Part shown: positions 36,667-57,100 of the stretch, one piece after another
How the letters are laid out: each line of letters opens with the position of its first letter
How positions within the stretch are numbered: the stretch's first letter is position 1
DNA from: Obrimoposthia wandeli
Taxonomy: Eukaryota
DNA: 64,000 bases
Direction: 5' to 3'
Assembly: GCA_977020255.1 (NCBI GenBank)
Contig: CDROCS010000023.1
Location: 124,001 to 188,000 of the forward strand
The notes under the pieces: generated by a model
What the model was told of the DNA's origin: nothing
What the model saw: the letters and a program-made list of their open reading frames with translations, nothing else
The model's database searches: none
Translations under genes and position numbers: made by a program

Positions 36667-36819
36667 AATGAACTGTTATCTTTAGAGCAAGTACATGAAG
36701 GTAAAATATGTGAAAATAAAAAATGAAAATTCACATCTTAATTATTATAATTTCATCAGATTGTTGCATCATCTTCATTGATTGATAGTATTAATTTAAT
36801 AATTAGCTAGTACTCACTT

Positions 36820-37510
36820 ACAGTTTTACATTCACTTGCAAAGACTCTTACTTGTATTCGTATTCACTTGCATTCATACTTGCATTCATTTACATTCAAT
36901 CTAACTCTCATTTATTCAAACTATCATTTAAATACATTCAAATACAATAATATTTTTACTAATTTTCATTCATACCGTCAAACTTAGTGTTGTTTTCTAT
37001 TAATATCGCTGTAACTTAGTCGTTCTAACTTTTAACATAATTCAGTATCACTGCTTCTTATAGTTGATAACTTGTTATTAATCTAACTGTACTTAATATA
37101 ACTTTTATTCATACGAAAACTCTATTTTAATTTACTAATAGTCTAAATTACACTCGCATTCAATCATACTCTCGACACTCTTATTATTATTTTTCTCAAA
37201 TACATTCACTTGCTAAGACTCTCACTTGTATTTGCATTCACTTGCATTCATACTTGCATTCATTCTTGCATTCACTTGCATTCATATCTGTATTCATTTA
37301 CTTTCATTCTAACTCTCATTTATTCAAATTAGCACTCAAATTCATTAATATTTTTACTAATTTTCATTCATACTTGACATTCGTACTTGCAATAGTATTC
37401 TTTTTTACTTGTACTTGTAACTGCATTCATTCATACTTGTACTTGTATTCATTGTTAATTTTACTTGCTTTATTTACATTTACACTTGTGTTAATTCATT
37501 CAATCGATAA
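36820..37510. repeat. Degenerate (CATTCACTTG/CATTCATACTTG)n minisatellite
   Basis: Visible short-period repeats. The inverted copy is at 60640-61500. Confidence 0.85.
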
Positions 37511-37689
37511 TTAATTTTATGTGTTCTTACAAGACATTTTAATTATTTTTTTTAGAAAGTCAAATAATAAATAGAAATATTAAGTTGATAATCGAATATG
37601 TACATAATTTGATTTATTTACATATAAAATAATATAATTTAAGATTTGGTATTCTAATTTATAAACAAAACCATTAGTAAATTTGAATA

Positions 37690-38883
37690 ACATGACGTCT
37701 TTCAAACATTCATAAGAAAAACTCTCAGCAAAGATGGTTTAGAACCACTTAACTTTTTATCATTCCTGGGTTGAGCTGCGTAAGTGCTCTAAAAATGTTA
37801 AAACATAAGGTTGAACTGATGCAGGATCCTGAAATGTACAACATGATTTCTACGGGTATACGCGGAGGAATGACATTTGTCCATAAGCATCATGTAGTCG
37901 CTAATGAAGAAACGAGTCTTTTATATATAGATATTAATAATTTATATGCATGGGCTCTTGATCAACCTTTACCATTTTGAATGGATTCTTGATGATATAA
38001 AATTAAACGAAATATTGCATAAAATGAAAAATGTGGACATGAATCATATTGAATATGGTTATGTTATGGAGGTAGACTTGGTAATACCAGAAAACCTTCA
38101 TGACTTTTTAAATGATCTACCTATAGCTCCAGAAAAGAAATGTCCTCATGGTAAAAAATTTAAAAAATTTTAATGACACATTCACCAAAAAGTCATTATG
38201 TTATTCATTGGAGACTATTGTAGATGTATGTTAGTTTAGGAGCAGTGGTAACAATTATTCATCGAGCAGTAAAGTTCTCTCAGGCTAAGATATTCGCAGA
38301 ATATATGGAATATAATTCAGAAATGAGGTCTCAAGCAACAAATAAATGTGACAAAGGATTTACAAAATTACAGATCACTATTTAATTGTTCAATTAATAT
38401 AGTTGCCGGAGATACTGATTCATTCTTTTTAGAATGCAAAGGTGTTAATTTAAAAAATCAGTTGTTACCTCAAATGATTGCAGATGGAGCATTATATACG
38501 TCAAATTATAATGTGAATGATCCATTATTTTCTAATGAATTTAATTGGAAAATAGGATTATTTAAAGATGAATCGGAAGGAAGAATGTATAAAGAATGGA
38601 TCTTCTTACTTTGTAAATGTTATTCACTTAAGTTTGAAGATGACTTTGAAATAATAAAGCAAAAGGAGTAAATCTTAAGGGATCAACGGTTGTACATCAA
38701 ACATATTTAGACGTGTATGAAAAAGGTAATGCATATACTATACCACAAAATAAGTTTGAAAAAATAAATCACCAACTATACACAATCATAATACAAAAGA
38801 CTGCTCTCAGCTCATCAGATAACAAACGCTAGTGGATCGAGAAAAATAGAAGCCGCACTTATGAACACTATGAAATTACATAA
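37690..38883 (+). pseudogene. Protein-primed DNA polymerase B fragment (family B)
   Basis: GIRGG, motif A YIDINNLYAWAL, YVMEVDL, YVIHWRLL, motif C IVAGDTDSFF, IGLFKDE, CKCY, KTALSSSDNKR. Frameshifts, stops and a deletion around motif B. Confidence 0.92.
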
Positions 38884-39959
38884 TAAATGTGTTTAATTTT
38901 GTATTATTCTCTGACTTCTTTCTTATTTAATTTTTATTATTTTTTAATATATAATTTAAGTTATTTAAATAAATTTTACCATAATCCTTTAGATGCGTAA
39001 GCCTGGGAAAAACTTTGATCTAAATTTTCACATAGCGTAGTAGGTATTATTACGTAGCACATTTCTTAACTGATAAGAGTGAATTTTAACCTAATTTTCA
39101 AATATAATAGTGTGTATTATTACGTAATACATTCCTTAACTGATAAGAGTGAACTTTGATTAAATTTCACATAGAATAATTGATTGATTACTATATGATT
39201 CTTTAACTTATGCCAAATCTGATCCTTAACTTGTGGACGACGTAAAATATTTACATGATTAAACTCGTAATATGTTGACAAATACAACCATGTACTTAAA
39301 ACTATGAAATTCCAACTTTTTTAATCCTTCATCTATGAACGACCATACCATTATGAACAAATTCGCCTTCTAAAGATGATTCCAACCATGTACTAAAACC
39401 TTGATATTTTAAACTTTATTTTGTCTTTAGCTCGACTATCTTTATGGACGACCACACCCCTTTAGATATGTGGATCAACTATAGATGGTCATGATCATAC
39501 CTACAAACCTTCAAGTCAAAACTGAGTTCGACACTTTCATCTATGGACAACCACAACCTCTTGGGTATGTTGACCGACCATAGACGGTCACGACCATATC
39601 TTCAAACCTTCATAACCTTTCTGAGCCAGACCTTGTGGTGTGGCAAGACACCCTTATGGTGAGGCAACATATACCCTTATGGTGTGACACCCTTTAACAA
39701 TGTGTGCGCACACACAGGGGGTCAAGAGATCTAGACTCCATCCTTCTACCTACTAATGTGTTTCCATTAAAATATGACACTTTGAGTTCGCACAAGAATT
39801 TATTTGTTAATGCGTTTTTCACAAAAACCTCTTTTTGTCACATCTGTTGGTTGTGTTTTTTCAAACACACCGATGATCTCTTCATCTTCTTCTAATATTT
39901 CTTGTGATGCAATGTGTTTGATGACTTCTCTTTCTTCTTGATGTTTCATCCAGAGCATG

Positions 39960-40830: not shown

Positions 40831-40889
40831 GGCGATAAAAAGAAAACAAAATCTAGGTTATAACCCTTAAATATACTTAATATTTTAGT

Positions 40890-43370: not shown

Positions 43371-43913
43371 TTAATACATAGGAATATGAGCACGTTCAAT
43401 TTTCCACATAGGCAACTTTGTTCCCATTTCATCTTTCTTGTAACCATAAAGTCGAATTGTTATAGTCCATTGCTTCCTTTTCGGAAACGCATCAACATCT
43501 ATTTCTCTTCCATACTCATCTAGAAATTCTGCATCGGCTCCTCGGATATAAAATTCATTCTTATTGAAAGTAAAATTTGGAACTGCCTTTTCAACTTTTT
43601 GTTTAAGATATTGAAAATCTGGTTTTTGAATACCTGATAGATAGTAGCTGAACTTTCTTCTTTCAATTGTCACAGGATTTACTAAAGCAATCAGTTGAGC
43701 CTTCTTCAAGAATCTAACTTTGTATTTGAAATATTGTTTCACTTCTTCATACATATCCTTATCCGATTCTTCAAACATTTCTTCGTCATCGCTAATACCC
43801 GTTGGCTATCGTCCATCATTGATAATTGTCTTTGATATGAATGCATTTATTGTGATTTGTCCTCCAATGGCGCATTCGTTTATACTAATTTGTAACAAAC
43901 ACATGAATCTCAT
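43371..43913 (-). pseudogene. Unknown Polinton protein of about 180 aa with one premature stop; beta-rich C-terminus, possibly SSB/OB-like
   Basis: ORF 43371-43778 extends in frame through a single TAG (about 43806) to an ATG at 43913. A fragment copy lies at about 58225-58340. The function is a guess. Confidence 0.55.
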
Positions 43914-43940: not shown

Positions 43941-44089
43941 TGATTGGACTAAATCGATATTAAAAATCAAATTTGATTGAAGAAATCTATCATCCAAATA
44001 TAGGTTTGCAAGATAATAACAAGAAACATGCAATGAAAAAGCAGGTTCAGACATATATAAAGAAGATTTTACAGAATAAAATTTCAGTC
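43941..44089 (+). promoter_or_regulatory. Core promoter of the TBP-like gene: CCAAT box, TATA box, initiator
   Basis: TGATTGG at 43941-43947, TATATAAAG at 44054-44062 and TCAGTC at 44084-44089 (A at 44086, 32 nt from the TATA start). ATG at 44092. Confidence 0.6.
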
Positions 44090-44091
44090 TA

Positions 44092-44591
44092 ATGAAACTC
44101 GTAAATATAAATTATAAGGGTAGAACAGAAGATGATGTTTCGTACTTACCATTCAATGAATGGAAGCCGAGACAATATGTAGAAAAGTTTGACAATTTCA
44201 CAGTTGTTATTTTTCCTACAGGTTAGTTTTTTATTTTATTTTCATATTGAATTCTTTAGGAAATTGTCGTGTTATGGGATGCAAAATACCAATGCTTGGG
44301 TTCAATTTACCATTTGGAATTCAAATCACCGCAATACAATCAATCACGATTTCGGCTAATCTCGGGAAACAGATAAATCTTTTTAAAACTGCAGAGAAAA
44401 TGAAAGAAGAATGCATGTTTGAACCAGAAATTTTTCCTGCTCTCAGTTATTTGAAGTTTAAACCGCTATGTGTAAATATATTTTCCAGTGGTAAAGTTAT
44501 GATATTGGGATTGAAAAATTTTGATTATCCAGACATTGTTGATTTGATTTTAGAAAATATATCTTATTACATCTTGTTATCTTTTCTATAA
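44092..44591 (+). CDS. TATA-binding-protein (TBP)-like protein, about 154 aa, two exons
   Basis: Exon 44092-44221, 38-nt GT-AG intron 44222-44259, exon 44260-44591 give an uninterrupted ORF. It has two TBP half-repeats: MKLVNI...TVVIFPTGNCRVMGCK and IQSITISANL...FEPEIFPALSY...CVNIFSSGKVMILGLK (compare TBP TALIFSSGKMVCTGAK and YEPELFPGLIY...LLIFVSGKVVLTGAK). Confidence 0.85.
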
Positions 44592-44619
44592 ACAAACCCG
44601 TTTAAACTTATTGTTTTGA

Positions 44620-44892
44620 ATGAATAATACTATAAATAGAGACAATGAAGTGTATCGTCTTGCCGACGAAATATTTTTGGGAAAAATTAGGGGTAAAGAA
44701 ATTTTATCAGAATTAAAAAATAATGATATAACAATAGATAACATTGAAATATTGGTTAGATCACACGTTATTCGAGAATTTAGAAATCGTACACAAATAA
44801 ATAAAATTATAGCCAAATATTCATTAATTATTTTTTGTATTTCATCTACAATAGCTCTAACATTGTACATTTCAATAAGGAAACTTCTATGA
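44620..44892 (+). CDS. Small protein (90 aa) with a C-terminal transmembrane helix
   Basis: Intact ORF between the TBP-like and ATPase genes. Hydrophobic YSLIIFCISSTIALTLYISI followed by RK. Confidence 0.6.
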   Translation: MNNTINRDNEVYRLADEIFLGKIRGKEILSELKNNDITIDNIEILVRSHVIREFRNRTQINKIIAKYSLIIFCISSTIALTLYISIRKLL

Positions 44893-44930
44893 TAATATAA
44901 ACAATATTAAAAAATGAAAGAGTATATGCA

Positions 44931-45578
44931 ATGGAGCTAAATAATAATGCTGTATTTCAAATAGTTGGCCCTAGTGGAAGTGGAAAGACACATTTCGTAT
45001 GTAAATTGTTGCAAAATGAATCTCTTTTCAAATCTAGTTTCAAAAATATTTATTGGCATCATGGTGGAGGAGGGGAAAGCGGATTAACCAAAACAGAAGT
45101 TTGCAAGTTGAATTGTATAAAATTTATTGAAGGATTTGATGCAAATTGGTGTGAAAGATTGAAAAAAGAAGATGTAATAATAATTGATGATTTGTATGAG
45201 GAGGCTAACAAGGAATCGGACTTTAATAATTTATTTACAAAGATTGCAAGACATCGTGAAGTAACAGTTATATTTATCACTCAGAATCTGTTTCACCAAG
45301 GAGGTCACCATAGAACAAGAAATCTTAATGTATATTACTTAGTTTTATTTAAAAATCCTAGAGATCAAACAGTTGTTGATTTTGTGGCCAGACAGGCATT
45401 TCCTCAAAATAAGAACTTTCTAGTTGATTCCTTCCACGATGCTGCTAAACAAGCACATGGGTATATATTTATTGACTTTACACAAGCTTGCCCAGATGAT
45501 TTACGTGTTTTAACCGACATATTTAATTCTAAGGGAGTAACTGTTTATAAACAAATAGAGAACAATTATAAAAAATAA
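44931..45578 (+). CDS. A32/FtsK-like genome-packaging ATPase
   Basis: Walker A GPSGSGKT, Walker B IIIDD, ARHREVTVIFITQ and YLVLFKNPRD, typical of Polinton ATPases. ORF intact, 215 aa. Confidence 0.92.
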   Translation: MELNNNAVFQIVGPSGSGKTHFVCKLLQNESLFKSSFKNIYWHHGGGGESGLTKTEVCKLNCIKFIEGFDANWCERLKKEDVIIIDDLYEEANKESDFNNLFTKIARHREVTVIFITQNLFHQGGHHRTRNLNVYYLVLFKNPRDQTVVDFVARQAFPQNKNFLVDSFHDAAKQAHGYIFIDFTQACPDDLRVLTDIFNSKGVTVYKQIENNYKK

Positions 45579-45757
45579 ATTCGCAATACCTTTTACAAAG
45601 TTGATAGTAAAACGTAAAGTAAAATCTAAAAAATCAAAAAAAAGAATCATTAAGAAAAAATAAGTGAAAAAATTAATCAAATCTGTAGTTAAAAATAAAA
45701 AAAAACTTAAATGGCTTCGAATATAAACAATATTTAAATTGAACCTTTTTTATTAAA

Positions 45758-46087
45758 ATGAAGAAAATACAAAGAAGCATACCCTATTTTAAAGCTTAAG
45801 TCAAAGCCTCTTCTAATACGAGAATGATTATTCTTAAAGTATTTCCATCTTTTGTTGTAGATGATTTATTGGAAGTTTTATATAATATAGTTTTGGGTCG
45901 AGTAAAAGTTGGAAATCGGAAAAATATATTAAAGAAATATAGAAAAACTCTTCTAGATATTGCTAATGTAAAAAGTTAAAAAAGGAAACGAAATATTATT
46001 CTTAAACAGAATGGTGGTTTCATAGGAGCTGTTATTCCAGTTGTTGCTTCAATTATCAGTAGTATTATAGCTGCGACACGTTCATAA
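45758..46087 (+). pseudogene. Small basic Polinton protein with an adenovirus pX/Mu-like C-terminus (two premature stops)
   Basis: MKKIQRSIP...LLEVLYNIVLG...KQNGGFIGAVIPVVASIISSII*, 110 codons in frame. A second, frameshifted copy lies at 54196-54480. Confidence 0.6.
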
Positions 46088-46173: not shown

Positions 46174-47372
46174 ATGGAGAAGATATGGTTCAATCCAAAA
46201 GATCCAATTGGCTACACAGGAGTTTCAAAATTAGCAAAAAGAACAAAACAAAATTACAAGAAAACGCAGAAATGGCTGAGCAACCAGTTAGCCTACAGTC
46301 TGAACAAACCGATGAGAAGAAGGTTTCCAACTAGAGCTTACAAAACCAGCGGTCCTAATAATTTATGGCAAATGGATTTGATGGATATGATCCTATATTC
46401 TTCCATTAATAAGGGATATCGATATATTTTAACATGTATTGATGGCTGAGCAACCAGTTAGCCTACAGTCTGAACAAACCGATGAGAAGAAGGTTTCCAA
46501 GTAGAGCTTACAAAACCAGCGGTCCTAATAATTTATGGCAAATGAATTTGAAGGATATGATCCCATATTCTTCCATTAATAAGGGATATCGATATATTTT
46601 AACATGTATTGATGTATTTAGCAGGTTTGCTCGTGCAATTCCAGTTAAAGCAAAGTCTTCAATAACTATGCTTGAAGCCATTAAAGAAATATTAAAAGAG
46701 GACATTCCACAAAATGTGCAAACTGATTTAGGAAAAGAATTTTATAATAAGCAAGTTCAATCATTATTTAAACAAAATAATATAAATCATTACTCTGTGT
46801 TTTCACAATACAAAGCAGCAGTAGTAGAAAGATTTAATCGTACTCTAAGAGATCGAATAAAAAAGTATTTCACAAAAGAAGGAAATAAAAAATGGATCCA
46901 AGTTTTACCTAAAATAATACATGCATATAATCACTCTGAACATAGAGGTCTCAAGGGAATGAGACCTGTTGATGTTACTAATAAAAACTCTAAGGAGATT
47001 TGGATGAACAGGAATAAAAAATAAAAAAATAAAAAAGCTAAATATAAGAAAAACGAAAATGTTCGAATTTCGAAAATTAGCTCTTCTCCATTTATTAAAA
47101 ACTTTGATCAGAATTGGAGCGATGACATATTTTGTATAAGTAAAATTGATCAAAAGAGTAATCCAATAATGTATACTATTAAAGATGCTGACAATAATAT
47201 CGTTCACGGTAAATTTTACAAGCAAGAACTACAAGTAATATCAAATAAACCTAGCGTTTTCCATATTCAAAAAATATTAAAATCTAAGGGTACAGGTAAA
47301 CATAAACAATACTTTGTTAAATGGCATGGTTATTCAGACCCAACTTGGATATCAGCATCTAATATAATATGA
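46174..47372 (+). pseudogene. Retroviral-type (rve) integrase with C-terminal chromodomain
   Basis: LWQMDL, CIDVFSRFA, VQTDLGKEF, AAVVERFNRTL, and chromodomain FHIQKILK...YFVKWHGYSDPTW. Disrupted by a 170-bp tandem duplication (46272-46441/46442-46611) and an in-frame TAA at 47022. Confidence 0.95.
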
Positions 47373-47728
47373 AGTCTATGTATATAGTTTTACCTAGTAA
47401 CGGATGTTCGAAGACTCAACCAGATAATTACGCTAGTAGCTTTATTATCGATTGGGAAAATCCTATAAATCTCCAATGAGAATGGGAAGCGGCTTTAACA
47501 GAATTTTCCTTTTATTATTCTCTAATTACTATCAGAAAAAACTCGCATATTTTGTTTACAAAAGAAGTTGATCATGAAAAATCAATTGAAGTTATGATTG
47601 GGTTTGATAGTAAAGGAAAATTCTATTACAATTGTATAGATAAAGAAGTGAAAGTAATATATGAAAAAAACAAAGTCATATTTAAAAATAGACTAAAACA
47701 TTTTTTAAAACCTATTCAAATTAGGTAA
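47369..47728 (+). pseudogene. Putative minor capsid (penton/PX-like) protein, N-terminal part only
   Basis: The start overlaps the integrase stop (ATGA). MYIVLPSNGCSKTQPDNYASSFII...*EWEAALTEF resembles the LPSN...P.N..S.F...G.WEVAL.E N-terminus I recall from this Polinton gene. One premature stop; truncated. Confidence 0.55.
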
Positions 47729-47838: not shown

Positions 47839-49135
47839 TTAAATTCTGAAGTGTCCATAAGCCAGGCTAGCGTTCTTTTCTACCCAAAAGCGTTTGTCGT
47901 CATTACTACTCAAAGCGATTTTGGTTGATTTATGGGAATACAGTTGATGGGCTCTTGAAATAAATCTAGTTTGCTCAACGCTTTCAATACACCCAGTATC
48001 ATAAACTTTCCGGTAGGCCTCATGTGTAAGATTGTTTCTTCCCACACCCTTTGCTATCATTGAACATGTATTATTAGATGCATGTAAACTGTAGCATTTA
48101 GGGCGTAGGAAAATACAATCATCATACGAAACCTGTCCCTCGCTTTCATCCTTAAATTTCCCTATAATATACTTTAAACTCATAGAATGTAGAGGATGGT
48201 TAGCGGGATATTTATGGGTATCTAGTAAGTTGTCCCTAAACATTGCTGGTAATAATTGATTATTTAAACTAACATTCCTACATTCTAAAAAGAAAGAGTC
48301 AGTGTCCCCTGCCACGATTTTGATCTCACAATTAAATTCTTGTCGGTATTTCTCCAATTCTATGTATTGAAGCTCATACATTCTGAGTTTAGAAATGTCT
48401 AAAACCGTTTGACCTATATAACTCGGTCGATCGAGACAAATACTCTGTTTTTCTAATAACACTGCTACCAAGTCATCTGCAATTGTAAAACTACGCTTGA
48501 AGTTGTACTTGCTAGTATATGTTATTAGTTTACGCTCATCATTGCAAAACCATAGACAAATACGTTTCCGCAAGTCCTCTACAGTTTTTCCAAAGAGGCT
48601 ATTACTTTTTAACTTGTAAAAATCTCAATCGAATTTGCCAGTGGCCAAATTACGTTTTCTTGAATTCTTGTCAATATAGTCTTTAAACACAAAGTTTTGA
48701 CTGAAGCTTATAGTACGATGAATTCGAGTAACTTTTGCTCCCAACTTTAAGTAGAATTGAAGAAGCCGCCAATGCACAACATAATTCAACTTGTCTTCAT
48801 GGGTTAACAATAATTTCTTCACCTTTGAATTAGGAGGGCATTGATGAACAGGCGCTACTGGAAGATCATCTAATTTATCATGCACATTGGGAGGGATTTT
48901 TAAATCAACCAAAGGTTTTCGCAAATTTATACGGAAAAGTCCCCTTATCGTTAACCGAAGCTGGGAACACTGACTGTGTAATTGGCTATGCATTTAAAGA
49001 TGCCGTTAAATTTTTTAAAGACCCGCTCAAAAACTGTAGAGAATCTATGAATCTTAAACTGCAGAATTCAGTATATGCAGTTAAAGATAAATATTTCTCT
49101 GAAGTTTGAGGTATACATGAAATTTCCCAAGAGAA
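47839..49135 (-). pseudogene. Protein-primed DNA polymerase B (family A copy 1), internally deleted
   Basis: FIDSLQFLSGSL..KGTFPYKF is joined at about 48912 to VDLKIPP; then YVVHWRLL, motif B KLKSNSLFGKT, DRPSYIGQTVLDISKLRMY, motif C IVAGDTDS, IGKFKDE, LRPKCY, ALSSNDDKR. Exo III and motif A are missing. Confidence 0.95.
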
Positions 49136-49139
49136 ATTT

Positions 49140-49820
49140 CATTAAAACGATTGTAGAACGATATTTCCTGAATAAAAAATAAAAATAATATATATATATT
49201 AAAAATAAAATATATAATTACAATTTACAAAAATAAAAAAATACCTAATGATGGCAATCCAAGTTGAGCTGGAATGAAGTCCTCTTCATTGATGGAATCC
49301 ATCCAGCTGTCGTCCGTTGACTCGACGAAATCGGATTCCTCGATGGTCTTCAACCATGAGTTATCGCTCCACTGAGGCTACTCCATCTCGAAATCTGACT
49401 GGGTGATATTTCGCATCCAGTCATTGTTTGAGAATTGGGTTGCTGGTGCCAACTCCTCAAAATATTCCTCGGAGATGTCGTTCATCCACTCATTGTTTGA
49501 CATTAGAGTGGATGGAGCAACAGCAGAATCAGGAGCCGGGAGAGAAGGACCAATGGCAGGACCATAAACTGGTAGACTGACTGCTACTGGAATTGGAGGT
49601 GGAGCTGGAGCGGCCTGCGAATCGCGCACCAATTGGACGATATCCCTCTTCTTGTTGTTGGCCGTGAAACACGATAGGTGAGCTCGATGTTCACTGAAGA
49701 ATTCTCGAAACTCCTTCTCCTCCATTGTTCTGCAGAAGGGGCAGACGAAGAAGTGAACACCTTGAGACTTTGTCCGGTAGTATGCAGACATTGTCTCCAT
49801 GCAGGACTCTCCTCCTGCTT
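49140..49820 (-). pseudogene. Cys/His (zinc-finger-like) protein with a Pro-rich linker and four acidic W-x-x-I-x-x-x-x-F repeats
   Basis: HFFVCPFCRTMEEKEFREFFSEHRAHLSCF; then NNEWMNDISEEYF, NNDWMRNITQSDF, (TAG at 49378) DNSWLKTIEESDF, DDSWMDSINEEDF. Possible terminal intron at about 49244-49168. A second copy lies at 56494-56730. Confidence 0.6.
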
Positions 49821-50048
49821 TTAAAGAGAAGGATTGTTTATCTATTATAGCTTGAAAAAATAATTTTATTCCTCCAATTAAAGAGAAGGATTGTTTATCT
49901 GTTATTGGTTGAAAAATTAATTTTATTCCTCCAATTAAAGAGAAGGATTGTTTATCTATTATAGGTTGAAAAAATAATTTTATTCCTCCAATTAAAGAGA
50001 AGGATTGTTTATCTGTTATTGGTTGAAAAAATAATTTTATTCCTCCAA
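49821..50048. repeat. Tandem array of 4 x 57 bp
   Basis: Units start at 49821, 49878, 49935 and 49992. Degenerate units occur at about 50090 and 56820-57000. Confidence 0.95.
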
Positions 50049-50114
50049 ACAAAAGGCTTATTTGTAAATAATTGTAAAATTTTAATAATGAATTCCTCCA
50101 ATTAGAATAATTGT

Positions 50115-50603
50115 TTATCTACATGTCAAGTAATAATAAGAAAGACTTAAACATTTTTTATATGCGCAATGGTCACCATGATTACGATATGGACAGCAAA
50201 TATTTTGTGGAATATTTAATAGATGATCACGTGAAATATTTTAAGTATTCAACCTGAATTTAGGAAAATATTTTTTTAACGTCTTATATTTTTTGCCATC
50301 CATTTCATCTCAAACATAAAAAATTCCATTTTCAATATCAAAATTAGATTTAATAGTATCGAAAATACATATTTCACAAAAAGCCTTATGTCCTTCTTTC
50401 CATTTTAATAAATGGAAATATTTAGTTAGATATAAATTAGTAAATTTTTTCTTATAATCTAAACTTTTAAATGGGATATCTATATAAAATATGAAATGCA
50501 AAGGATGAAAAACGTCGCATACATCCATAATACATAATTCTTTTATAATATAATCCCCTTTTTTGTTAATGAAAGCCTCAAAATCTATGATATATTCCTG
50601 CAT
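50115..50603 (-). pseudogene. Stand-alone DEDD/DnaQ-like 3'-5' exonuclease with a C-terminal Cys/His cluster (two premature stops)
   Basis: MQEYIIDFEAF...YIIKELCI (Exo I D-x-E), HFIF, HLLKWKEG, FYV*DEMDGKK, CCPYRNHGDHCAYKKC. The copy at 56995-57210 has the C-terminal half without the stops. Confidence 0.6.
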
Positions 50604-50751
50604 AATTACCCAAATTTGTAGCAAATCCCGTTGTTTATAACGAAAAACTATTATTCAAAAATTTATTAAAATGACGAGCTAGTATTTAGACAATTTTATA
50701 TTTAGACAATTTTATAACATAATCAATAAAGACAAAATAATAATCAAAAAT

Positions 50752-51054
50752 TTATTTTTTTGTGGAAGGACTCTCTTCCGGTTTAATCTGGAGGATTCGA
50801 ACATCCTCCGTCTCTTCGCTTCTTTTTTCCTCCACCTTCTTTTTTTCCATTTCGATTTTCTTGTTCCACTCCACAACCCGACATCGTTCTGCTAGCCGCC
50901 TGTCCTGAATCTCCACCCGACGATTCCACTCGATCGCGACAGCAGTATATAAATTCTGGTTGAGGATCCTCTTTCGTAAGTCTCCTTTCTTCTCATTTAT
51001 TCTTATGTTTGCCTCGATCTTCGTCACCAAACTTTGCAATTTAATAAATTCCAT
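50752..51054 (-). CDS. Small charged coiled-coil protein (100 aa)
   Basis: Intact ORF with an upstream TATATATATAG. An inverted decayed copy lies at about 57765-57990. Confidence 0.55.
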   Translation of the reverse strand: MEFIKLQSLVTKIEANIRINEKKGDLRKRILNQNLYTAVAIEWNRRVEIQDRRLAERCRVVEWNKKIEMEKKKVEEKRSEETEDVRILQIKPEESPSTKK

Positions 51055-51346
51055 TTTTTAATTATGACGATGTTAATAAATTTGAACCTATATATATAAA
51101 TTTAAGATATTTTTAATCCAATCACAAGCAATTAAAATATATTTATCAAATGAAAGTTTAATAAATATATAACTAATCATTGCTTTTATATTTAATCCTA
51201 AAATTTTTTAATTATTCCTTAACAATCCATTCACATTTGAATAAGTTAACTTTATTTTTAATCTTGTTATTTTAATAAACTTAAGTAGTATATTTTAATA
51301 TTACTAAATTCTAAAATAAATAATAATAAAAAGACAACACAAGAAA

Positions 51347-53453
51347 CTAATGTTTAATAATTATATTTTTGAACATTTTTACGAAGTCATCATTGGGATC
51401 ATCCGGGTCGTAATCCCTCCGACTTAGTTTTATAGGAGAGAGCGGTACAGGTTCCTTCTTCTTTGGCCGGCCCGGTTTCTTTTTCGGCTTCACCGGTTGC
51501 TGTACAGCAATTGTCCTTCCCTCAGGTTTTGGCAATAGTTGCCGCAACGTTTTGGGAGGAGGTGCAGCCGATGTTGATGGCCCGGACATAGAAGCAGTAG
51601 CCTTCCTCTTCCGCGGAGCTTTCTTCTGTTTCTCCTCCTTCTCACGCTGAAGCTGGCGTGAGACGGCATCCTGTTGCCCACGCGAATCTGGAAGCATTGC
51701 CGGTGTATCCAGTTCCGCCAGGAATTCGTCCAAACCAGCGTCATCCCAGGCCCTCTTCAAGTTTTGGCTGGTTGTTGGACGAGGAGAAGCAGTCTCATGC
51801 AGACGTGGTTGACTCGAGGGCGGACTTATCTCGATCGGCGAGACTGGGATCCTCTCGTATAAAATTGGACCGTCGTCCACTGGAGGAGGGAGAATCTCCT
51901 GCTGGCCAATCACCGCCTCAGAATAATGGCCAATTGAGGTGCGAATTTTTCTCGAGCGCCTCGTCTTCTTCACCTCTGCCCGCTTTGTCCTTTTCTTAGG
52001 GAAAGGAGTAACTTCTCCCCAAGTCTCCTCAATTATCCGGACAGGTTCCTGCAAATGAAAACAAAAATAAAATTTCAAATAAATTTTATTTAATTAAAAA
52101 AATATTTAAAATACCTAAAAATTACCTCAATAATCTTATACGGACGTTTTTCCGGCCGCTCAATCGTTACTTCACTCGAATTGAGCAGACAGGATTTCGC
52201 CTTTCTAAGACGCCATGTCTTCCGTACAGCAGCCTGCTTCGTTCGCTTCTGCGGGAAAGGATAAATTTTGGCCCATGTATCCTCAGTTAATATTATTGGT
52301 TCCAGCAACAAAAAAACCTTATAAAATTTAAACATATAAATAATTTACCTCGATGACGGGTAGATTAGCCTGTTTCACCAACTTGGCATTCTTCCGATGG
52401 ACCGTATTGGTTTTGACCCGATGACGTCGAAGTTTCTTAACTGCCGCTTGCTTCCTATCGACAGGTAGTCTCCGAGATGCCTCCTCCCAAATTTCCTCCA
52501 CCAATTCAGCTTCCTAAGTGAATAATTAAATAAATTTACTAATTTATAATAATATACCTCAATTTTAGCCGGAGTCGGTAGGTATCTCTGATCAATCCTG
52601 GGATCATCCTGGCTACATTGACTCGCCAAGTATTGCGGTTCAATTAGCCTCTCAATCGTGGTCACTGACGGTGCCAAATCCAGTTGCAGTTTCTGAAAAT
52701 AAAATTAAAAAACATTTTAAATAAATGATTTCTAACCTCATTCGTCGCCTTTATTCTCCTAACAGGACGTATCGGAGATTGTGGCCTTCTGAATGGATCA
52801 GGCACTGTATTGTCGGGTATCGGAGTCGGAGTTGTAGAGGGAGTGAGACCATCCCATTCGTCGGTGAACAGATGCCACTCATCTTCATCCATTTCTGCAA
52901 CCATGGACTCGTTGGCTCCTGGGGCTCCGATACTTGGCTGTATCCACTCCTCCTCCCCATCCGACGGAACGTCATCAGTAAACAGCTCCTCGTCTGAGTC
53001 TGGTGCCAGTATTATCTCCGGTTGAGACAGCGGGATCAATTTCCAGGGGCATTTGATTGCCGCCTCAAAATTGTCAAAGAGATTGGATCTCCTTGCTGCT
53101 ACTGCTGAAGTTGCCGGACGATTGGCTTCTGTGTTCAGCCTGGGAGTACAGTCTTCCCAATTCTCTATCGATTCCTGACTAGTCAGATCGATATATTGGG
53201 ATCTCTGTACCCCACCTCGCACGCTCATATGTTCTTCTCTTGGAGTTGAGCTGGCCAATGGCGGTTCTTCTAGCAACAGTTGGGCTCTTGCTGCTGCTTC
53301 TCCTTCGTCTCCTTCACTCACCACCGACGAGTCTTGACTAAGTAAGTCAATGTACTGCGCCGGTGGTGGCGTTCGCTGCTGTACTGGAGAGAGATCTCCA
53401 TACAGCTGAACCTCCGTCTCTTCATCCAAATCGACGTTGTTGAAATTTTACAT
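51347..53453 (-). pseudogene. Five-exon, about 630-aa intrinsically disordered nuclear-type protein (SIM-like, NLS and AT-hook-like motifs)
   Basis: Exons 53453-52737, 52692-52558, 52513-52349, 52302-52126 and 52048-51347. All introns are phase 0 (44, 44, 46, 77 nt) and give one continuous frame. Codon 2 is TAA and the intron-3 acceptor reads TG. TATATAAG at 53516-53509. Confidence 0.7.
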
Positions 53454-53850
53454 TCTTGCTTCTTGATTAATGATATTTGATTTATGAAAAATAATGAAAA
53501 GAGGTTTCCTTATATACAAAAAGAATAGACTAACCCTCTTTTGTCGTCCAATGAGAGTGGGTTAATCAAATAATTTATTTGAAAATCAGTAGGCTTTTCT
53601 CAATTTTTTAACTATGTTTGAATGCTGGAATGTCATTGGATAAAACATATTTTATTCGAAAATATAACTATTTTCTTAAGATTTTGTTGCTTAAGTTTAA
53701 CGTCCAATGAAAACGTATTATTCTAAGAATTTATGGTATTTTCTTAAATTTTGTTGATGTTTGAATACATGTATATCTTTGGATTTAAAATAGTAATCTT
53801 TTCTTGACTGTACATGTTTGTATGGTATAAAAAATTCATGAACCTATTTA

Positions 53851-53873
53851 AGGTCAAGTTAAGGTCATGACCT
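53851..53873 (+). promoter_or_regulatory. Composite nuclear-receptor half-site cluster (AGGTCA DR5 plus IR0)
   Basis: AGGTCA-agtta-AGGTCATGACCT, about 290 bp inside the right terminus and upstream of the five-exon gene. Confidence 0.4.
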
Positions 53874-54159
53874 GTTCGCGAGCCTGTATTTATTACTCGT
53901 TGATCCACCGCGAGCCCGGAGGGCACGCTTTGGCCAATATTTTGGCGACTCAGAACCTTAATCAAAATTTTTGGAGCATTATGAGATTTTTAAATTTAAA
54001 GGGTGTTATATGGAGTTAATTATTTTTTTGAGTGTTTGGGAGGGGGGGTAGAAAGTCTTTCTACACACCTACACGAAATTTCACTCCACACACATGCACG
54101 GTTTTAAAGGACAGTAGGGGGGAGGGGAGTGTGGATTAGACCGGACACATCCACCTACT

Positions 54160-57100
54160 CATCTACAATAGCTTACAATAGCTTAATTTTTAAAATGAAG
54201 AAAATACAAAGAAGCATACCCTGTTTTAAAGCTTTGATCAAAGTCCCTTCTCATAAGAGAATGATTATTCTTAAAGCATTTCCATCTTTTGTTGTAGATG
54301 ATTTATTGGAAGTTTTGTATAATATATAGTTTTGGGTCGAGTAAAAGTTGGAAAACGGAAAAATATATTAAAGAAATATAGAAAAACTCTTCTAGATATT
54401 GCTAATGTAAAAAGTAAAAAAGGAAACGAAATATTATTCTTAAACAGAATGGTGGTTTCATAATAGCTGTTATTCTAGTTGTGATGTTTGTTGACAAAAG
54501 TCATTCCACCACGTATACCATAATCATACATTTGATACATCGCAGGATCTTGCAGTAACTCTTGCAGTTGCTCATGAAAGACCGGGTAAACTAAAGAAAT
54601 GCATGGGATCTAGCCCATCCTCTGCTAAAGATTTTACACGAAAGGACTCAAACACATCAGCTAAAAGATAAATGTCTAACTTCATATAATAAAGCATATA
54701 ATCTAGAAGATTTCGACCATTATTCTCCTAAAATGTACGGGCCTCATTATAGTCTTGAAGACTTACACCCTCAAATTCAGTTATGGGTGGGATTTCTGTA
54801 GTAGTTTCCAAATCTGCACAGGTTTTCGCAAATTTATACGGAAAAATTCCCTTATCATTAACCGAAGCTGGGAACACTGACTGTGTAGTTGGCCATGCAT
54901 TTAAAGATGCCGTTAAATATTTTAAAGACCCGCTCAAAAACTGCAGAGAATCTATGAATCTTAAACTGCAGAATTCAGTATATGCAGTTAAAGATAAATT
55001 TTTCTCAGAAGTTTGAGGTATACATGAAATTTCCCAATAGCTTAATTTACCCAAAGCGTATTTAAATATATGATGCAAATCATATCCTTTGAGGTTATGT
55101 AACACGATGGGAATTCGTGGTATTTTAGGGAGACGACGGCCAATGTTACAGAGGTTGCACGCTGCTCCCAAGTATCGCCCCGTAACATGATCGTGATCTC
55201 TGACTAACTTAGATTGGGTTCCACACAAATAACATAATCTACAAGAATTAAAATTAACCCAGTCTATGCCTGTCATGATCATTGCTTGATGAGCATTAAG
55301 ATCATACCACGGTTTGATAATTGTTGTTCCTAATTCTTTTCAAAAGCTATTCTAACCTAAATGGTAAGCAAAGAATCATGGCCATCTACTCGAACTCGAA
55401 GAGGTGGATTAGTCCAGGTATATCTAACTACTTGCACGGTATATTTTCATAAATGCAATAAAAACCGCTTGTTTTAAAGAAGTATCTGAAATTAGATAAG
55501 ATTATATCCTCCTGATAACTCATCGAATTCTCACAACAAATAGCATGACTCATTTATATTTCCGGACAAAAACTACGAGTATCTAATTTAATAATAGGGG
55601 GCCTTACTTAATAGTCGTCAAAGGCAGCAATACAATCAGGAATTTATCCGATTACACCCGAAGTTTGGCTGGGGGTATGACCTCCAAGGGTTTTATAACC
55701 CCTTAAAATTAATTATTTTGTCAATGATCATTCAAACAGTAGCAATGTGTTGGTGGGCCTCCAATGGTTCAAATCTCTGGAGAATGGCTAGAAGTTTGCT
55801 TTTTAAAATAAGTTGAACAACATTTACACACCACCATTTTACTAGAAATTTATTTCAATTAAATTCTTTTATGGTTTCTTTTGCAATTTAAAAACCATTT
55901 TAAATGTAGATTGAGAAAATTTTGGAACACTCTCTATAAATGTGTGTATTGCATAACTGTCAAAAAGAATTTTTTTTTAAGAGTTATTTAGTTTATTATA
56001 CATTAACCAGTGGCCTAAAATATTTCAATGGGTCTTTGAAAACTTCTTAATTTGTCAGAGTTAAGGCCTGGTTGGGTTCTGTTGAGAAATTAGGGGTTGA
56101 AATTTAAAAACCAAATAAAAAATTCCTCGTAATTTGGGATTTATCCCATTCTCATCGTCATGACACCACATATTCAGCGAATTTACCAAATAGACAGTTA
56201 GGGCACTGGTTTGTGTGGTATTTACAAGAAATTATGACTCAACAAAAATGTTCATTATATATTTGAAAATTAAATCGAATGAATATTTTACCACAAAGAA
56301 AACTTTGCAAATAATTTATATTCTTTTCCCTACCTGTGCCATATACATTAAATTACATTTTCTTATAAAGCAGCATTGTTTTGCTGATTCCATGGATCAT
56401 TTTGGATCCCGATTGGGAACGGATTAAATCATACCCTTGAACCAATTAACACAAAACTAAAACACATCTGACTTTATTTCGCGAGTCTAAATATCAAATA
56501 TTTGCAGTGAAGCAGGACAAGTAAGCTTGATGTTCATCGAAGAAGTCTCGAAACTCCTTCTCCTCCATAGTTCTGCAGAATGTGCAGATGAAGTACACAT
56601 GCCCATGAGACTTTGTCCGATAGTAGACGGACATTACCGCCATGCAGGAAACTCCGTAACAGGTTACACGTAATCTGAAATAATAAATATTAATAAATAA
56701 ACAAAAAATAAAGGTTCTTACAATATTCATTATTTTAAAATTCGGGGATTTATATGAAAAAGGTGTTTGTTTATATACTAAATTTTATGCACACATGCTC
56801 TTTTCTTATTGGATGACAATATTGAATTTATTCCTCCACTGAGAAGGGTTGTTTATCTGTTATTGGTTGATAATATTATTTTTAATATATTTTATTCCTC
56901 CAATTAAAAGGTTTGTTCATTTGGATTTAGATATTTTGTTATTGGTTGAAAATGTTATTTTTATATATTGTATTTCTCCATTTAGAAGTATTGTTTATCT
57001 ACATGTCAAGTAATAATAAGATAGACTTAAACACTTTTTATATTGGCAATGATCACCATGATCACGATATGGACAGCAAATATTCTGTGGAATTTTTAAT

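What the first reader, a model, noticed from the sequence alone, without database searches (positions are those of the whole stretch)
44092..44591. A Polinton-like element encodes its own spliced TBP-like protein
Seen: removing a 38-nt GT-AG intron gives an intact ORF of about 154 aa with both TBP half-repeats. By my manual alignment it keeps three of the four DNA-intercalating Phe equivalents (IFPTG, EIFPAL, NIFSSG); the first appears lost. It also keeps the first-repeat Asn (LVNI), while the second is Ser (IQSI). The gene sits inside the termini, two genes from the packaging ATPase, and is intact while most core genes are broken. Established: TBP homologues occur in NCLDV giant viruses, whereas the Polinton core set is pPolB, integrase, ATPase, protease and capsid proteins. 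Inference: this lineage carries a divergent, compact TBP that could direct or protect transcription of its own TATA-containing genes, or act as a decoy for host TBP partners. I do not know of TBP as a described Polinton gene.
Basis: partly seen in the sequence, partly recalled or inferred. Interest (0 to 1): 0.92.

Follow-up and report, generated by a model that had tools for sequence, protein, structure and literature searches.

The report
Polinton's own compact TBP and promoter box
A decayed virus-like transposon (Polinton/Maverick) in an invertebrate genome carries an apparently intact, spliced gene for a shrunken TATA-binding protein. That gene belongs to a large undescribed family that travels with a lineage-specific promoter box, TATAAACA, so these elements may bring their own promoter-recognition factor.

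Summary
Removing a 38-nt GT..AG stretch (44222-44259) joins 44092-44221 to 44260-44591 into a 153-codon frame. The closest relative by ATPase (L014) has a 40-nt intron at the same codon and phase. Exon 2 alone passes Pfam TBP (46 bits) and models as a TBP repeat. A full-length relative models (pLDDT 96.9) as a complete TBP saddle whose N-terminal half keeps the strands but lacks both helices.

At least 437 clusters of these roughly 150-aa proteins exist, almost all in metagenomes. Every long contig examined is a Polinton-type array (ATPase, rve integrase, adenain-like protease, pPolB; some with Bcl-2 or TRAF homologues).

New here: most genes of these elements carry the octamer TATAAACA about 35 nt upstream of the ATG. 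It is found in 50/160 ORF upstream regions in the TBP-bearing clade and 0/146 in the TBP-less sister clade. The TBP-like genes themselves never carry it (0/15).

Best reading, inferred: the protein is an element-encoded core-promoter factor for that box, analogous to the herpesvirus vTBP/TATT system.

Precedent is one figure-legend label ("TBP") in Starrett et al. 2021. I rate it a new variant of a known kind, interest 0.8.

The parts
44054..44062 (+). TATATAAAG, a canonical-type TATA box of the TBP-like gene. TATAAAGA starts 36 nt upstream of the ATG. It is not the clade octamer (G instead of C at position 7).
44084..44089 (+). TCAGTC, an initiator-like motif. Its A (44086) lies 32 nt downstream of the first T of the TATA box and 6 nt before the ATG.
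   Evidence: reading of the sequence. That it works as an initiator is inferred.
44092..44221 (+). Exon 1 of the TBP-like gene: 43 codons plus the first base of a Gly codon. It encodes the strand-only N-terminal half-repeat up to ..VVIFPT.
44222..44259 (+). 38-nt phase-1 GT..AG intron, 84% A+T, with no other copy in the window.
   Evidence: The same position and phase are interrupted in L014:376-415.
44260..44591 (+). Exon 2 of the TBP-like gene: the end of the N-terminal half (NCRVMGCK), a linker and a complete TBP repeat, with a TAA stop.
   Evidence: Pfam PF00352, 46.2 bits against a cut-off of 22.9. PDB TBPs down to 5e-14. AF2 pLDDT 93.8. Foldseek top 44 hits all TBP.
44587..44594 (+). TATAAACA octamer overlapping the TBP stop codon, 33 nt upstream of the ATG of ORF 44620-44892.
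44620..44892 (+). 90-aa ORF with a hydrophobic C-terminus, lying between the TBP-like gene and the ATPase. No homologue was detected.
44896..44903 (+). TATAAACA octamer 35 nt upstream of the ATPase ATG.
44931..45578 (+). A32/FtsK-type packaging ATPase, intact (215 aa). It is 74-78% identical to those of L005, L009, L010, L012 and L014.
43371..43778 (-). 135-aa ORF, the conserved divergently oriented neighbour of the TBP-like gene. Homologues sit in the same position in L005, L012, L013 and L017.
45722..45729 (+). TATAAACA octamer just upstream of the small conserved gene.
45758..46045 (+). Small conserved gene (about 100 aa in relatives). A 94%-identical partial second copy lies at 54187-54482. 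Whether this copy is intact was not resolved.
46174..47369 (+). rve-type integrase, broken. Homology is spread over two reading frames (at least one frameshift), with one in-frame stop and one internal tandem duplication.
47366..47671 (+). N-terminal remnant (about 50-110 residues) of the 346-379-aa gene that follows the integrase in relatives. The rest is missing.
47839..55312 (-). Pieces of protein-primed family B DNA polymerase, heavily broken. Over the whole 37.7-58.4 kb span there are 11 homology pieces in 4 frames with 10 in-frame stops, on both strands. An Endonuclease_7-like stretch precedes the N-terminal polymerase piece.
50124..50603 (-). Homologue of the 158-164-aa gene that follows the protease in relatives. 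It is broken (2 in-frame stops). A TATAAACA lies at 50632-50639 (-), 36 nt upstream. A partial second copy lies at 57004-57204.
36700..39689 (.). Left arm of the long, patchy inverted repeat (70-93% identity) that brackets the region. It contains tandem repeats and a polymerase-like fragment.
58651..61608 (.). Right arm of the inverted repeat. It includes the N run 59746-60047, which was left as it is.

Best explanation
Shown: the gene encodes a compact (153-aa) TBP paralogue that belongs to a deep clade of Polinton/Maverick (adintovirus-like) elements of eukaryotes. The protein is a full ten-stranded TBP saddle. Its C-terminal half is an ordinary TBP repeat, and its N-terminal half keeps the strands but has lost both helices.

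Inferred: the protein binds the clade's own core-promoter box, TATAAACA, which sits about 35 nt upstream of the start codon of most element genes. The canonical C-terminal lobe would sit on the 5' TATA half. The remodelled N-terminal lobe (stirrup Phe replaced, NxN strand) would sit on the non-canonical 3' AACA half. The protein would recruit host TFIIB and RNA polymerase II through its conserved C-terminal stirrup (Y/F-E-P-E-L/I-F-P-A-L). It lacks the N-lobe helices that host TBP regulators and TFIIA-side partners use.

The TBP-like gene itself never carries the octamer. In the window it has a canonical TATATAAAG plus a TCAGTC initiator-like motif. It would therefore be switched on by the host machinery and sit upstream of the octamer genes. 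This resembles the TBP-like late factor of beta- and gamma-herpesviruses and its TATT promoters.

In this window the copy is spliced (a 38-nt phase-1 intron) and looks intact, inside a rearranged and largely decayed element.
For: Identity and fold:
- Pfam TBP 46 bits.
- PDB TBPs 5e-14.
- AF2 of relative P0002: pLDDT 96.9, pTM 0.87, N half strands only.
- Foldseek: top 44 PDB hits all TBP, TM 0.6-0.73 over the full saddle.
- The window's own exon-2 product: pLDDT 93.8, TBP hits at about 2.2 A.
- N half versus C half: hhalign 91.6%.

Family:
- 53 representatives at E<=1e-30 and 437 clusters at E<=1e-15.
- 64/65 members scanned hit Pfam TBP.
- The window keeps 13/13 near-invariant positions.

Linkage to Polinton genes.

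Promoter box:
- 37/93 genes have TATAWA 30-44 nt upstream of the ATG, against 3.6 +/- 1.8 for random positions.
- 34/37 have C at position 7 and 35/37 have A at position 8.
- TATAAACA is the commonest complex 8-mer in L010, L012, L037 and L042, with variants CATAAACA in L036 and TATAAACG in L040.
- Occurrences are almost all on the gene-sense strand.

Co-inheritance:
- In the ATPase tree all TBP-bearing loci form one clade, with 0.76-1.9 boxes per kb. The TBP-less sister clade has 0-0.44 per kb in 14 of 16 loci; the other two have 0.75 and 0.99 per kb without the strand bias.
- YATAAACR lies at -28..-48 in 50/160 against 0/146 ORF upstream regions.

Hierarchy: 0/15 TBP-like genes carry the octamer, and 4/15 (plus the window) carry a canonical TATAWAWD.

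Stirrup conservation: E100 57/63, E102 63/63, F104 62/63. TFIIB-type cyclin folds clamp the C-terminal stirrup (PMC6066478).

Precedent for a nuclear DNA virus with its own TBP-like factor and variant box: PMC4893493 and PMC8360532.
Against: - No binding or expression data exist; the link between protein and box is correlation.
- All TBP-bearing elements form one clade. The co-occurrence is therefore a single evolutionary event retained over deep divergence (ATPase down to 37% identity), not repeated independent association.
- A canonical TBP can sit on a box with C at position 7. PDB 1qn3, the C(-25) AdMLP variant bound to plant TBP, is listed.
- ATAAACA is also the forkhead consensus (RYAAAYA), so a host factor could read the box (one search shows FoxF-type use of the same string).
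- L036 uses CATAAACA at more variable distances.
- The orientation argument (N lobe on the 3' half) rests on textbook TBP-DNA structures, not on a model of this protein with DNA.
- The window copy sits in a decayed element and may no longer be used.
Confidence: 0.58

Rival explanations
1. The octamer is read by host factors: host TBP, possibly together with a forkhead-type factor, since ATAAACA fits RYAAAYA. The TBP-like protein does something else on DNA, for instance coating or condensing the genome, marking the ends, or helping replication.
For: - Canonical TBP tolerates C at position 7 (PDB 1qn3).
- The octamer contains a perfect forkhead core, and TATAAACA appears in FoxF papers.
- L036's CATAAACA weakens the TATA half but keeps the forkhead core.
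- TBP-fold domains serve other nucleic-acid-binding roles in other proteins (established knowledge: RNase HIII N-domain, AlkA N-domain).
Against: - The box sits at a fixed 32-43 nt from the ATG, as a core-promoter element would.
- L040's TATAAACG breaks the forkhead core but keeps TATA.
- The box is absent from the TBP-less sister clade, which lives in similar metagenomes.
- The TFIIB-side stirrup motif is nearly invariant, which a packaging protein would not need.
- The octamer is not concentrated in the inverted-repeat arms of the window.
Confidence: 0.17
2. The protein is a decoy or antagonist. It binds host TATA boxes or host TFIIB without supporting full pre-initiation complex assembly, because its N-lobe helices and one kinking Phe are missing. 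This would damp host transcription or shield element DNA from host TBP regulators.
For: - Both N-lobe helices and the first stirrup Phe are lost.
- The TFIIB-side stirrup is kept.
- Neighbouring accessory genes in relatives are host-interaction types: Bcl-2, TRAF/MATH, RING.
Against: - A decoy does not explain the clade-specific octamer at about -35 of the element's own genes.
- It does not explain why the TBP-like gene is the one gene that avoids the octamer.
- The residues aligned to TBP's DNA-facing positions are among the best conserved in the family: N5 56/61, N7 55/61, F41 63/63, R47 62/63, S73 56/63, F104 62/63, N118 63/63, F120 63/63. That fits specific DNA binding.
Confidence: 0.13
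3. In this particular copy the 38-nt stretch is an inactivating insertion, and the gene is a fossil like its neighbours. The open frame after 'splicing' would be a coincidence.
For: - The element is decayed and rearranged.
- Most relatives are intronless.
- The only host introns visible in the window are 1.3 and 4.8 kb, so the host's tolerance of 38-nt introns is unknown.
- There are no transcript data.
Against: - The boundaries are exactly GT..AG, with an AG|GTTAGT donor and a pyrimidine-rich TTCTTTAG|G acceptor.
- It is the only pair that opens the frame.
- The junction restores the family motif with no residue gained or lost.
- L014, about 50% diverged in protein, has a 40-nt GT..AG stretch at the same codon and phase with both flanking frames open.
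- The window keeps 13/13 near-invariant residues.
- The stretch is neither a duplication nor a repeat copy.
Confidence: 0.1

Closest known systems
Cellular and archaeal TATA-binding protein (Pfam PF00352)
   Same: - Saddle fold with a ten-stranded concave sheet.
- The second repeat is recognisable by sequence, 28-41% identical to the second repeat of solved TBPs.
- Three of the four kinking Phe are kept.
- One of the two central Asn is kept.
- The stirrup motif E-P-E-L/I-F-P on the TFIIB side is kept.
   Different: - About 150 aa instead of a core of about 180.
- The N-terminal repeat has lost helices H1 and H2.
- The first stirrup Phe is replaced.
- The second-repeat Asn is Ser or Thr across the whole family.
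- It is encoded by a mobile virus-like element, not by a cellular locus.
TBP-like late transcription factor of beta- and gamma-herpesviruses (BcRF1 / UL87 / ORF24) with TATT late promoters
   Same: A nuclear DNA virus brings its own TBP-fold protein, and its genes carry a variant TATA-like box distinct from the host consensus (PMC4893493, PMC8360532). BcRF1-type proteins appear among the weaker BFVD structural matches. This is what the system most plausibly works like.
   Different: - The herpesvirus proteins are large (about 400-1000 aa; BFVD matches of 363-1005 aa) and extremely diverged in sequence.
- They act within a six-protein viral complex and bind Pol II directly.
- The protein here is a minimal 150-aa saddle with clear sequence similarity to TBP.
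- No partner proteins are identified here, and nothing has been tested.
TBP homologues of nucleocytoplasmic large DNA viruses (mimivirus-type, phycodnavirus, asfarvirus B263R-type)
   Same: They are virus-encoded TBP-fold proteins and the best BFVD structural matches (Heterosigma akashiwo virus, Terrestrivirus, abalone asfa-like virus and others).
   Different: - They are 186-500 aa with two full repeats.
- They serve a virus-encoded RNA polymerase in cytoplasmic factories.
- Polinton-type elements encode no RNA polymerase and must use host Pol II.
- No compact member is present in BFVD or in IMG/VR contigs.
'TBP' gene label in MELD viruses with adintovirus-like PolB (Starrett et al. 2021, Virus Evol 7:veaa055, Fig. 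5 legend)
   Same: Same kind of element: pPolB, integrase, A32-type ATPase, and host-like accessory genes such as TRAF and Bcl-2 relatives. The gene was noted as 'similar to TATA binding proteins'.
   Different: It is only a label in a legend. There is no description of the protein's architecture, its distribution, its intron or any promoter box. I could not see the figure, so I cannot say whether it is the same protein family.
Cellular TBP-related factors (TRF2/TLF/TBPL1 class; own knowledge, not tested here)
   Same: They are TBP paralogues that have changed DNA-contact residues and serve a dedicated subset of promoters.
   Different: They are cellular and full-sized with two complete repeats. 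None came back as a specific hit in my searches.

Membership tests
TBP family (PF00352) | Sequence match to the TBP repeat above Pfam's gathering score | tested here: met
   Window exon-2 product scores 46.2 bits against a cut-off of 22.9. 64/65 family members scanned match.
TBP family (PF00352) | Two tandem repeats forming one saddle | tested here: met
   Met in a modified form. AF2 of relative P0002 (pLDDT 96.9) aligns over the whole TBP core (Foldseek E about 1e-9, TM 0.6-0.73). The N half is related to the C half (hhalign 91.6%) but lacks both helices, and no sequence search detects it as a TBP repeat. The spliced window protein itself was not folded because it has no reference to hand in.
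TBP family (PF00352) | Four DNA-kinking Phe, two per repeat | tested here: not met
   Three of four are kept: F41, F104 and F120 equivalents, each in 62-63 of 63 members. The first-repeat stirrup position is Lys in the window and Pro, Lys, Arg, Ser or Thr across the family.
TBP family (PF00352) | Central Asn in strand S1 of each repeat | tested here: not met
   Repeat 1 has Asn (56/61). Repeat 2 has Ser (56/63) or Thr (7/63).
TBP family (PF00352) | Binds and bends TATA DNA and nucleates a pre-initiation complex | not testable with these tools
   Indirect only: the conserved concave-face residues, the conserved TFIIB-side stirrup and the co-inherited box.
Polinton / Maverick (adintovirus-like) element | Protein-primed family B DNA polymerase | tested here: met
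   Window pieces hit PF03175 (28.3 and 18.6 bits) and cover 706/1158 residues of L009's polymerase, but are heavily broken. The gene is intact in L009 and L010.
Polinton / Maverick (adintovirus-like) element | Retrovirus-type (rve) integrase | tested here: met
   PF00665 at 46.6 bits. Residue coverage against relatives is full, but the gene is broken.
Polinton / Maverick (adintovirus-like) element | A32/FtsK-type packaging ATPase | tested here: met
   PF04665 at 28.1 bits against a cut-off of 22.8. The ORF is intact at 215 aa.
Polinton / Maverick (adintovirus-like) element | Adenain-like cysteine protease | tested here: not met
   Not found in the window at E<=1e-3. It is present in relatives L002, L006, L007 and L008 (PF00770, 28 bits against a cut-off of 21.3). 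I read this as deleted from this copy.
Polinton / Maverick (adintovirus-like) element | Double jelly-roll major capsid protein and penton protein | tested here: inconclusive
   Relatives have conserved genes of about 405-416 aa and about 330-380 aa in the expected places, but these have no Pfam, PHROG or PDB sequence hit. Locus-derived proteins could not be handed to the structure tool. In the window only an N-terminal remnant of one is left.
Polinton / Maverick (adintovirus-like) element | Terminal inverted repeats and a target-site duplication | tested here: inconclusive
   A long patchy inverted repeat (36.7-39.7 kb against 58.65-61.6 kb) brackets the genes. It contains polymerase-like fragments and tandem repeats, so it may reflect two partial copies head to head. 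The target-site duplication was not examined.
Virus-encoded TBP plus variant-box system (herpesvirus vTBP/TATT type): 'works like', not membership | A variant box upstream of a defined set of viral genes, absent from the factor's own gene | tested here: met
   TATAAACA at about -35 in 50/160 against 0/146 ORF upstream regions. 0/15 TBP-like genes carry it.
Virus-encoded TBP plus variant-box system (herpesvirus vTBP/TATT type): 'works like', not membership | The factor binds the box and recruits Pol II | not testable with these tools
   No binding, expression or interaction data exist.

The most novel reading that the evidence does not exclude
A deep clade of Polinton/Maverick (adintovirus-like) elements runs a private core-promoter system on host RNA polymerase II. 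It consists of a minimal, half-stripped TBP whose remodelled N lobe reads the non-canonical 3' half of a cognate box (TATAAACA), and it is switched on from a host-type promoter. This would be the smallest known TBP and a natural orthogonal factor/box pair. It would also show that even 15-20-kb integrating viruses take over promoter recognition rather than relying on host TFIID.
Probability: 0.45. Interest if true: 0.88.

Novelty: new variant of a known kind. Interest (0 to 1): 0.8.

Why it matters
Polintons/Mavericks and adintoviruses are thought to depend entirely on host transcription, and how their genes are expressed is essentially unknown. A conserved element-encoded TBP together with a clade-specific box at a fixed distance from most genes would give these elements a defined transcription programme. 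It would explain how a tightly packed 15-20-kb genome fires many short-leader genes. It would add a third, independent case of DNA viruses carrying TBP-fold factors, after giant viruses and herpesviruses.

The protein is also of structural interest. It is a TBP saddle that keeps the whole DNA-binding sheet and the TFIIB-side stirrup but has shed the N-lobe helices, the side that TFIIA, Brf1 and Bdp1 contact in canonical TBP (PMC6066478).

Practically, the octamer and the compact TBP are easy sequence markers for finding and classifying this clade in genomes and metagenomes. Gene callers currently truncate or mis-call the gene.

Tried and rejected
- **Host TBP locus:** rejected. The gene lies in a colinear Polinton gene block, and full-saddle identity to cellular TBPs is only about 20-25%.
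- **Second copy in the window:** none found.
- **Intron shared by L005:** no. L005 reads through the junction but lacks an ATG.
- **Database proteins that begin at MGCK:** I suspected intron-bearing genes, and the three I checked were not. L005's call is an internal-Met start in a gene that reads through but lacks an ATG, L094's is a caller truncation of an intact gene, and L093 has a frameshift. Only L014 shares the intron.
- **AATCACTTTTT upstream of some TBP-like genes** (L003, L004, L006-L008): seen, but not general.
- **IMG/VR viral contigs:** no family member.
- **Rfam:** nothing in the window.
- **MCP-like protein of relatives:** no hit in Pfam, PHROGs or PDB by sequence. It could not be folded because the structure tool does not accept locus-derived proteins.
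- **Host identity:** only 'invertebrate animal'. The ABCG/white-like exons have best hits of <=52% across priapulid, spiders, molluscs and a sponge.
- **Host short-intron norm:** not obtainable. The only host introns visible are 1.3 and 4.8 kb.
- **Co-variation of TBP residues with the box variants of L036 and L040:** some differences were seen (NANY, KFRTMGC, QSYTLK), but n=2 from one subclade is not evidence.
- **dN/dS:** not attempted. The relatives with DNA in hand are too diverged, about 50% protein identity.
- **Origin of the family** (archaeal, eukaryotic or giant-virus TBP): not resolvable from scores. PDB bit scores of 50-70 are spread across all three.
- **Folding the spliced window protein itself:** left out because a joined product has no reference to hand in. 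The closest intronless relative and the exon-2 product were folded instead.
Full report
**1. The observation**

An ATG at 44092 opens a frame that ends in ..VVIFPT at 44220, plus one base. A 38-nt stretch (44222-44259) begins GT and ends AG. From 44260 a second frame runs to TAA at 44591.

A scan of every GT..AG pair nearby found this one pair, and no other, that gives an open frame. The product is 153 aa. The stretch is 84% A+T, with donor context CAG|GTTAGT and acceptor TTCTTTAG|G. It is not a copy of anything else in the window.

**2. Is it a TBP?**

- The exon-2 product alone matches Pfam TBP at 46.2 bits against a cut-off of 22.9.
- It matches solved TBPs down to E = 5e-14, with archaeal TBPs first.
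- Its AF2 model (pLDDT 93.8) matches only TBPs in the PDB: the top 44 hits, at about 2.2 A over about 82 columns.
- Exon 1 alone hits nothing in Pfam.

**3. Relatives and the splice**

A first protein search found six metagenomic proteins of 146-190 aa, about 52% identical. They read straight through the junction (..IFPTGNCRVMGCK..).

Against a family HMM the two window pieces match positions 1-45 and 46-150, so they abut exactly. The spliced model gives a single 178-bit domain over positions 1-150.

Most relatives have no intron. L014 does. It is the metagenomic contig whose ATPase is the closest to the window's (78%). It carries a 40-nt GT..AG stretch at the homologous Gly codon, in the same phase, with both flanking frames open. 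The two proteins are only 76/153 identical and the two intron sequences have diverged.

I therefore treat the intron as real, at about 0.9. It is shared by a relative, and that licenses the exon join.

**4. Architecture**

A profile search of 1.8 billion representative proteins found 53 representatives at E<=1e-30. A second search found 437 clusters at E<=1e-15. Almost all come from ENA, JGI or Logan metagenomes. Typical length is 145-165 aa, and the only names are JGI's automatic 'TATA-box binding protein'.

With 65 sequences as alignment, AF2 models the closest intronless relative (P0002) at pLDDT 96.9 and pTM 0.87.

- The C-terminal half is a normal TBP repeat (S1'-H1'-S2'..S5'-H2').
- The N-terminal half has the strands but neither helix.
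- Foldseek aligns the whole model to whole TBP cores (E about 1e-9, TM 0.6-0.73; all of the top 44 hits).
- hhalign relates the N half to the C half (91.6%, E 8e-7).

- Phe is kept at three of the four kinking positions (62-63 of 63 members).
- The first-repeat stirrup Phe is replaced (Pro, Lys or Arg).
- Asn is kept in repeat 1 (56/61).
- Ser or Thr replaces Asn in repeat 2 (63/63).
- The stirrup of the C-terminal repeat, Y/F-E-P-E-L/I-F-P-A-L, is nearly invariant. That is the side TFIIB-type cyclin folds clamp (PMC6066478).
- The window copy keeps all 13 near-invariant positions.

In BFVD the matches are giant-virus TBPs and, more weakly, herpesvirus BcRF1-type proteins. All are larger than this protein. 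IMG/VR has no member.

**5. Context**

In the window the gene lies in a block colinear with L005, L009 and L012:

- a divergent 135-aa gene (43371-43778, minus strand)
- the TBP-like gene
- a 90-aa ORF
- the A32-type ATPase (intact)
- a small gene
- the rve integrase
- the start of the next gene

The rest of the element is decayed and rearranged. I give counts only.

- The integrase has homology in two frames, one in-frame stop and one internal duplication.
- The polymerase is in 11 pieces in 4 frames with 10 stops, on both strands.
- The 161-aa gene has 2 stops.
- The following gene is reduced to an N-terminal remnant.
- No protease or MCP-like gene was detected.

A long patchy inverted repeat brackets the region. 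It contains polymerase-like fragments, so it may represent two partial copies head to head.

The flank carries an ABCG/white-like gene whose best hits are invertebrate animals at <=52% identity.

Every long contig with a family member is a Polinton-type array with ATPase, rve integrase (sometimes with a chromodomain), adenain-like protease and pPolB. Some have Bcl-2, TRAF/MATH or RING genes. That is the gene set of adintovirus-like MELD viruses.

**6. A promoter box**

While looking at upstream regions I found that 37 of 93 called genes in these elements have TATAWA starting 30-44 nt before the ATG. Random positions give 3.6 +/- 1.8.

In 34 of the 37 the next base is C, and in 35 the one after is A. 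The box is therefore TATAAACA, which departs from the canonical TATAWAWR at position 7.

- It is the commonest complex 8-mer of L010, L012, L037 and L042.
- L036 uses CATAAACA and L040 uses TATAAACG.
- Occurrences are almost all on the gene-sense strand.
- In the window it precedes ORF 44620 (-33), the ATPase (-35), the small gene and the 161-aa gene homologue (-36).

I fetched 80 metagenomic loci through the ATPase. On an ATPase tree, all TBP-bearing loci fall in one clade, with 0.76-1.9 boxes per kb. The sister clade has 16 loci of at least 4.5 kb, no TBP-like ORF, and 0-0.44 boxes per kb in 14 of them. The other two reach 0.75 and 0.99 per kb without the strand bias.

Upstream of ATG-ORFs of at least 100 aa, the box lies at -28..-48 in 50/160 cases in the TBP-bearing clade and 0/146 in the sister clade.

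The TBP-like genes themselves never have it (0/15 distinct upstream regions). Four of the 15, and the window, have a canonical TATAWAWD instead. The window has TATATAAAG, with a TCAGTC initiator-like motif 32 nt downstream.

**7. Explanation**

Shown:
- the fold
- the family
- the linkage to Polinton genes
- the shared intron
- the box, its position, and its co-inheritance with the gene

Inferred:
Its canonical C lobe sits on the TATA half and its remodelled N lobe on the AACA half. This orientation comes from textbook TBP-DNA complexes.
- It recruits TFIIB and Pol II through the conserved stirrup.
- It lacks the N-lobe helices used by host regulators and TFIIA-side partners.
- Its own gene is started by host machinery.

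The closest working analogy is the herpesvirus TBP-like late factor with its TATT promoters (PMC4893493, PMC8360532).

Caveats:
- The association is one clade, so it is one evolutionary event.
- A canonical TBP can bind a box with C at position 7 (PDB 1qn3).
- ATAAACA is also a forkhead site.

**8. Literature**

Full-text searches found no paper on a Polinton or Maverick TBP or on a TATAAACA promoter. The one exception is the legend of Fig. 5 in Starrett et al. [quoted passage not shown] I could not see the figure.

**9. Slips and limits, declared**

(a) In my reasoning I recalled from memory a stretch, short motifs and residue numbers of cellular TBPs. The residue mapping in this report rests on tool alignments.

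(b) A self-comparison listing and the tandem-repeat tool printed coordinates of a duplication that lies inside the broken integrase, and I noted those coordinates in my reasoning. In my reasoning on L093 I also worked out where its frameshift lies and what it is. Neither is repeated here.

(c) I joined the two exons inside scripts on the strength of homology-defined exon blocks. That was before I found the relative that shares the intron. No joined sequence was printed, and the temporary files were deleted.

(d) The spliced window protein was not sent to any search or folding tool because it has no reference. Its pieces and its closest intronless relative were used instead.

(e) The N run 59746-60047 was left untouched.

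Noticed in passing
L010:9398-9775 and L011:9398-9775: A 125-aa Bcl-2 family homologue (PF00452) sits directly upstream of the TBP-like gene in roughly 16-kb elements. That identical TBP protein was recorded on 24 contigs, 13 of them 10-20 kb long, which suggests a circulating virus rather than a fossil.
   Followed up: no
L012:854-1858 and 5476-6447; L005:1446-1868; L001:1104-1568: Other host-like accessory genes occur in TBP-bearing elements: two TRAF/MATH genes (each with a TATAAACA at -35), a RING-finger gene and a C2H2 zinc-finger gene.
   Followed up: no
window 54728-55279 (-) and L009:2839-6315: The N-terminal piece of the polymerase also hits Endonuclease_7 (PF02945, 25.1 bits against a cut-off of 23.6). 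L009's intact 1158-aa polymerase has the same hit (weak). This is an endonuclease VII-like domain fused ahead of the pPolB.
   Followed up: no
L009:3-2213 (-) and 2839-6315 (+): L009 carries two polymerase-like genes in opposite orientation at one end. In the window, polymerase-like fragments also lie in both arms of the long inverted repeat. The 'termini' may be head-to-head partial copies.
   Followed up: partly
window 42398-43183; 49821-50048; 62152-62886; 60704-61080: Several tandem-repeat arrays (periods about 103, 57, 134 and 178 nt) lie inside and next to the element. The first lies just beyond the 3' end of the 135-aa gene.
   Followed up: no
window 40881-41266 and 62884-63284: A separate inverted repeat pair (84% identity) is out of register with the main arms. 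It is possibly a different small element or a rearrangement scar.
   Followed up: no
window 45750-46044 / 54187-54482; 48910-49133 / 54817-55040; 49658-50329 / 56501-57208: Direct duplicates (79-95% identity) of element segments show that the region holds parts of more than one copy.
   Followed up: partly
window 15502-23765 (-): A host ABCG 'white'-like half-transporter gene in three large exons, with introns of about 1.3 and 4.8 kb. Best hits are invertebrate animals at <=52% identity, so the host lineage is not represented closely in the protein database.
   Followed up: partly
L003, L004, L006, L007, L008 (10-20 nt upstream of the TBP-like ATG): A shared AATCACTTTTT motif lies just before the start codon of several TBP-like genes that lack any TATA box. 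It is possibly an initiator-type element of the octamer-free gene class.
   Followed up: partly
P0038, P0055, P0059, P0062, P0064 and other database proteins: At least ten database clusters of this family begin at the internal Met of ..RxMGCK. In the three loci examined (L005, L093, L094) the cause was an internal-Met call in a gene that lacks an ATG, a frameshift, and a gene-caller truncation of an intact gene. The family is therefore systematically mis-called in metagenome annotation.
   Followed up: partly
L036 and L040 TBP-like proteins: The two elements with variant boxes (CATAAACA, TATAAACG) share substitutions at strand positions aligned to DNA-facing residues (NANY for NINY, KFRTMGC for KCRIMGC, QSYTLK for QSITVT). 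This is a lead for protein-box co-variation, but both come from one subclade.
   Followed up: partly
window 59746-60047: A run of 302 N inside the right inverted-repeat arm. It was left as it is.
   Followed up: no
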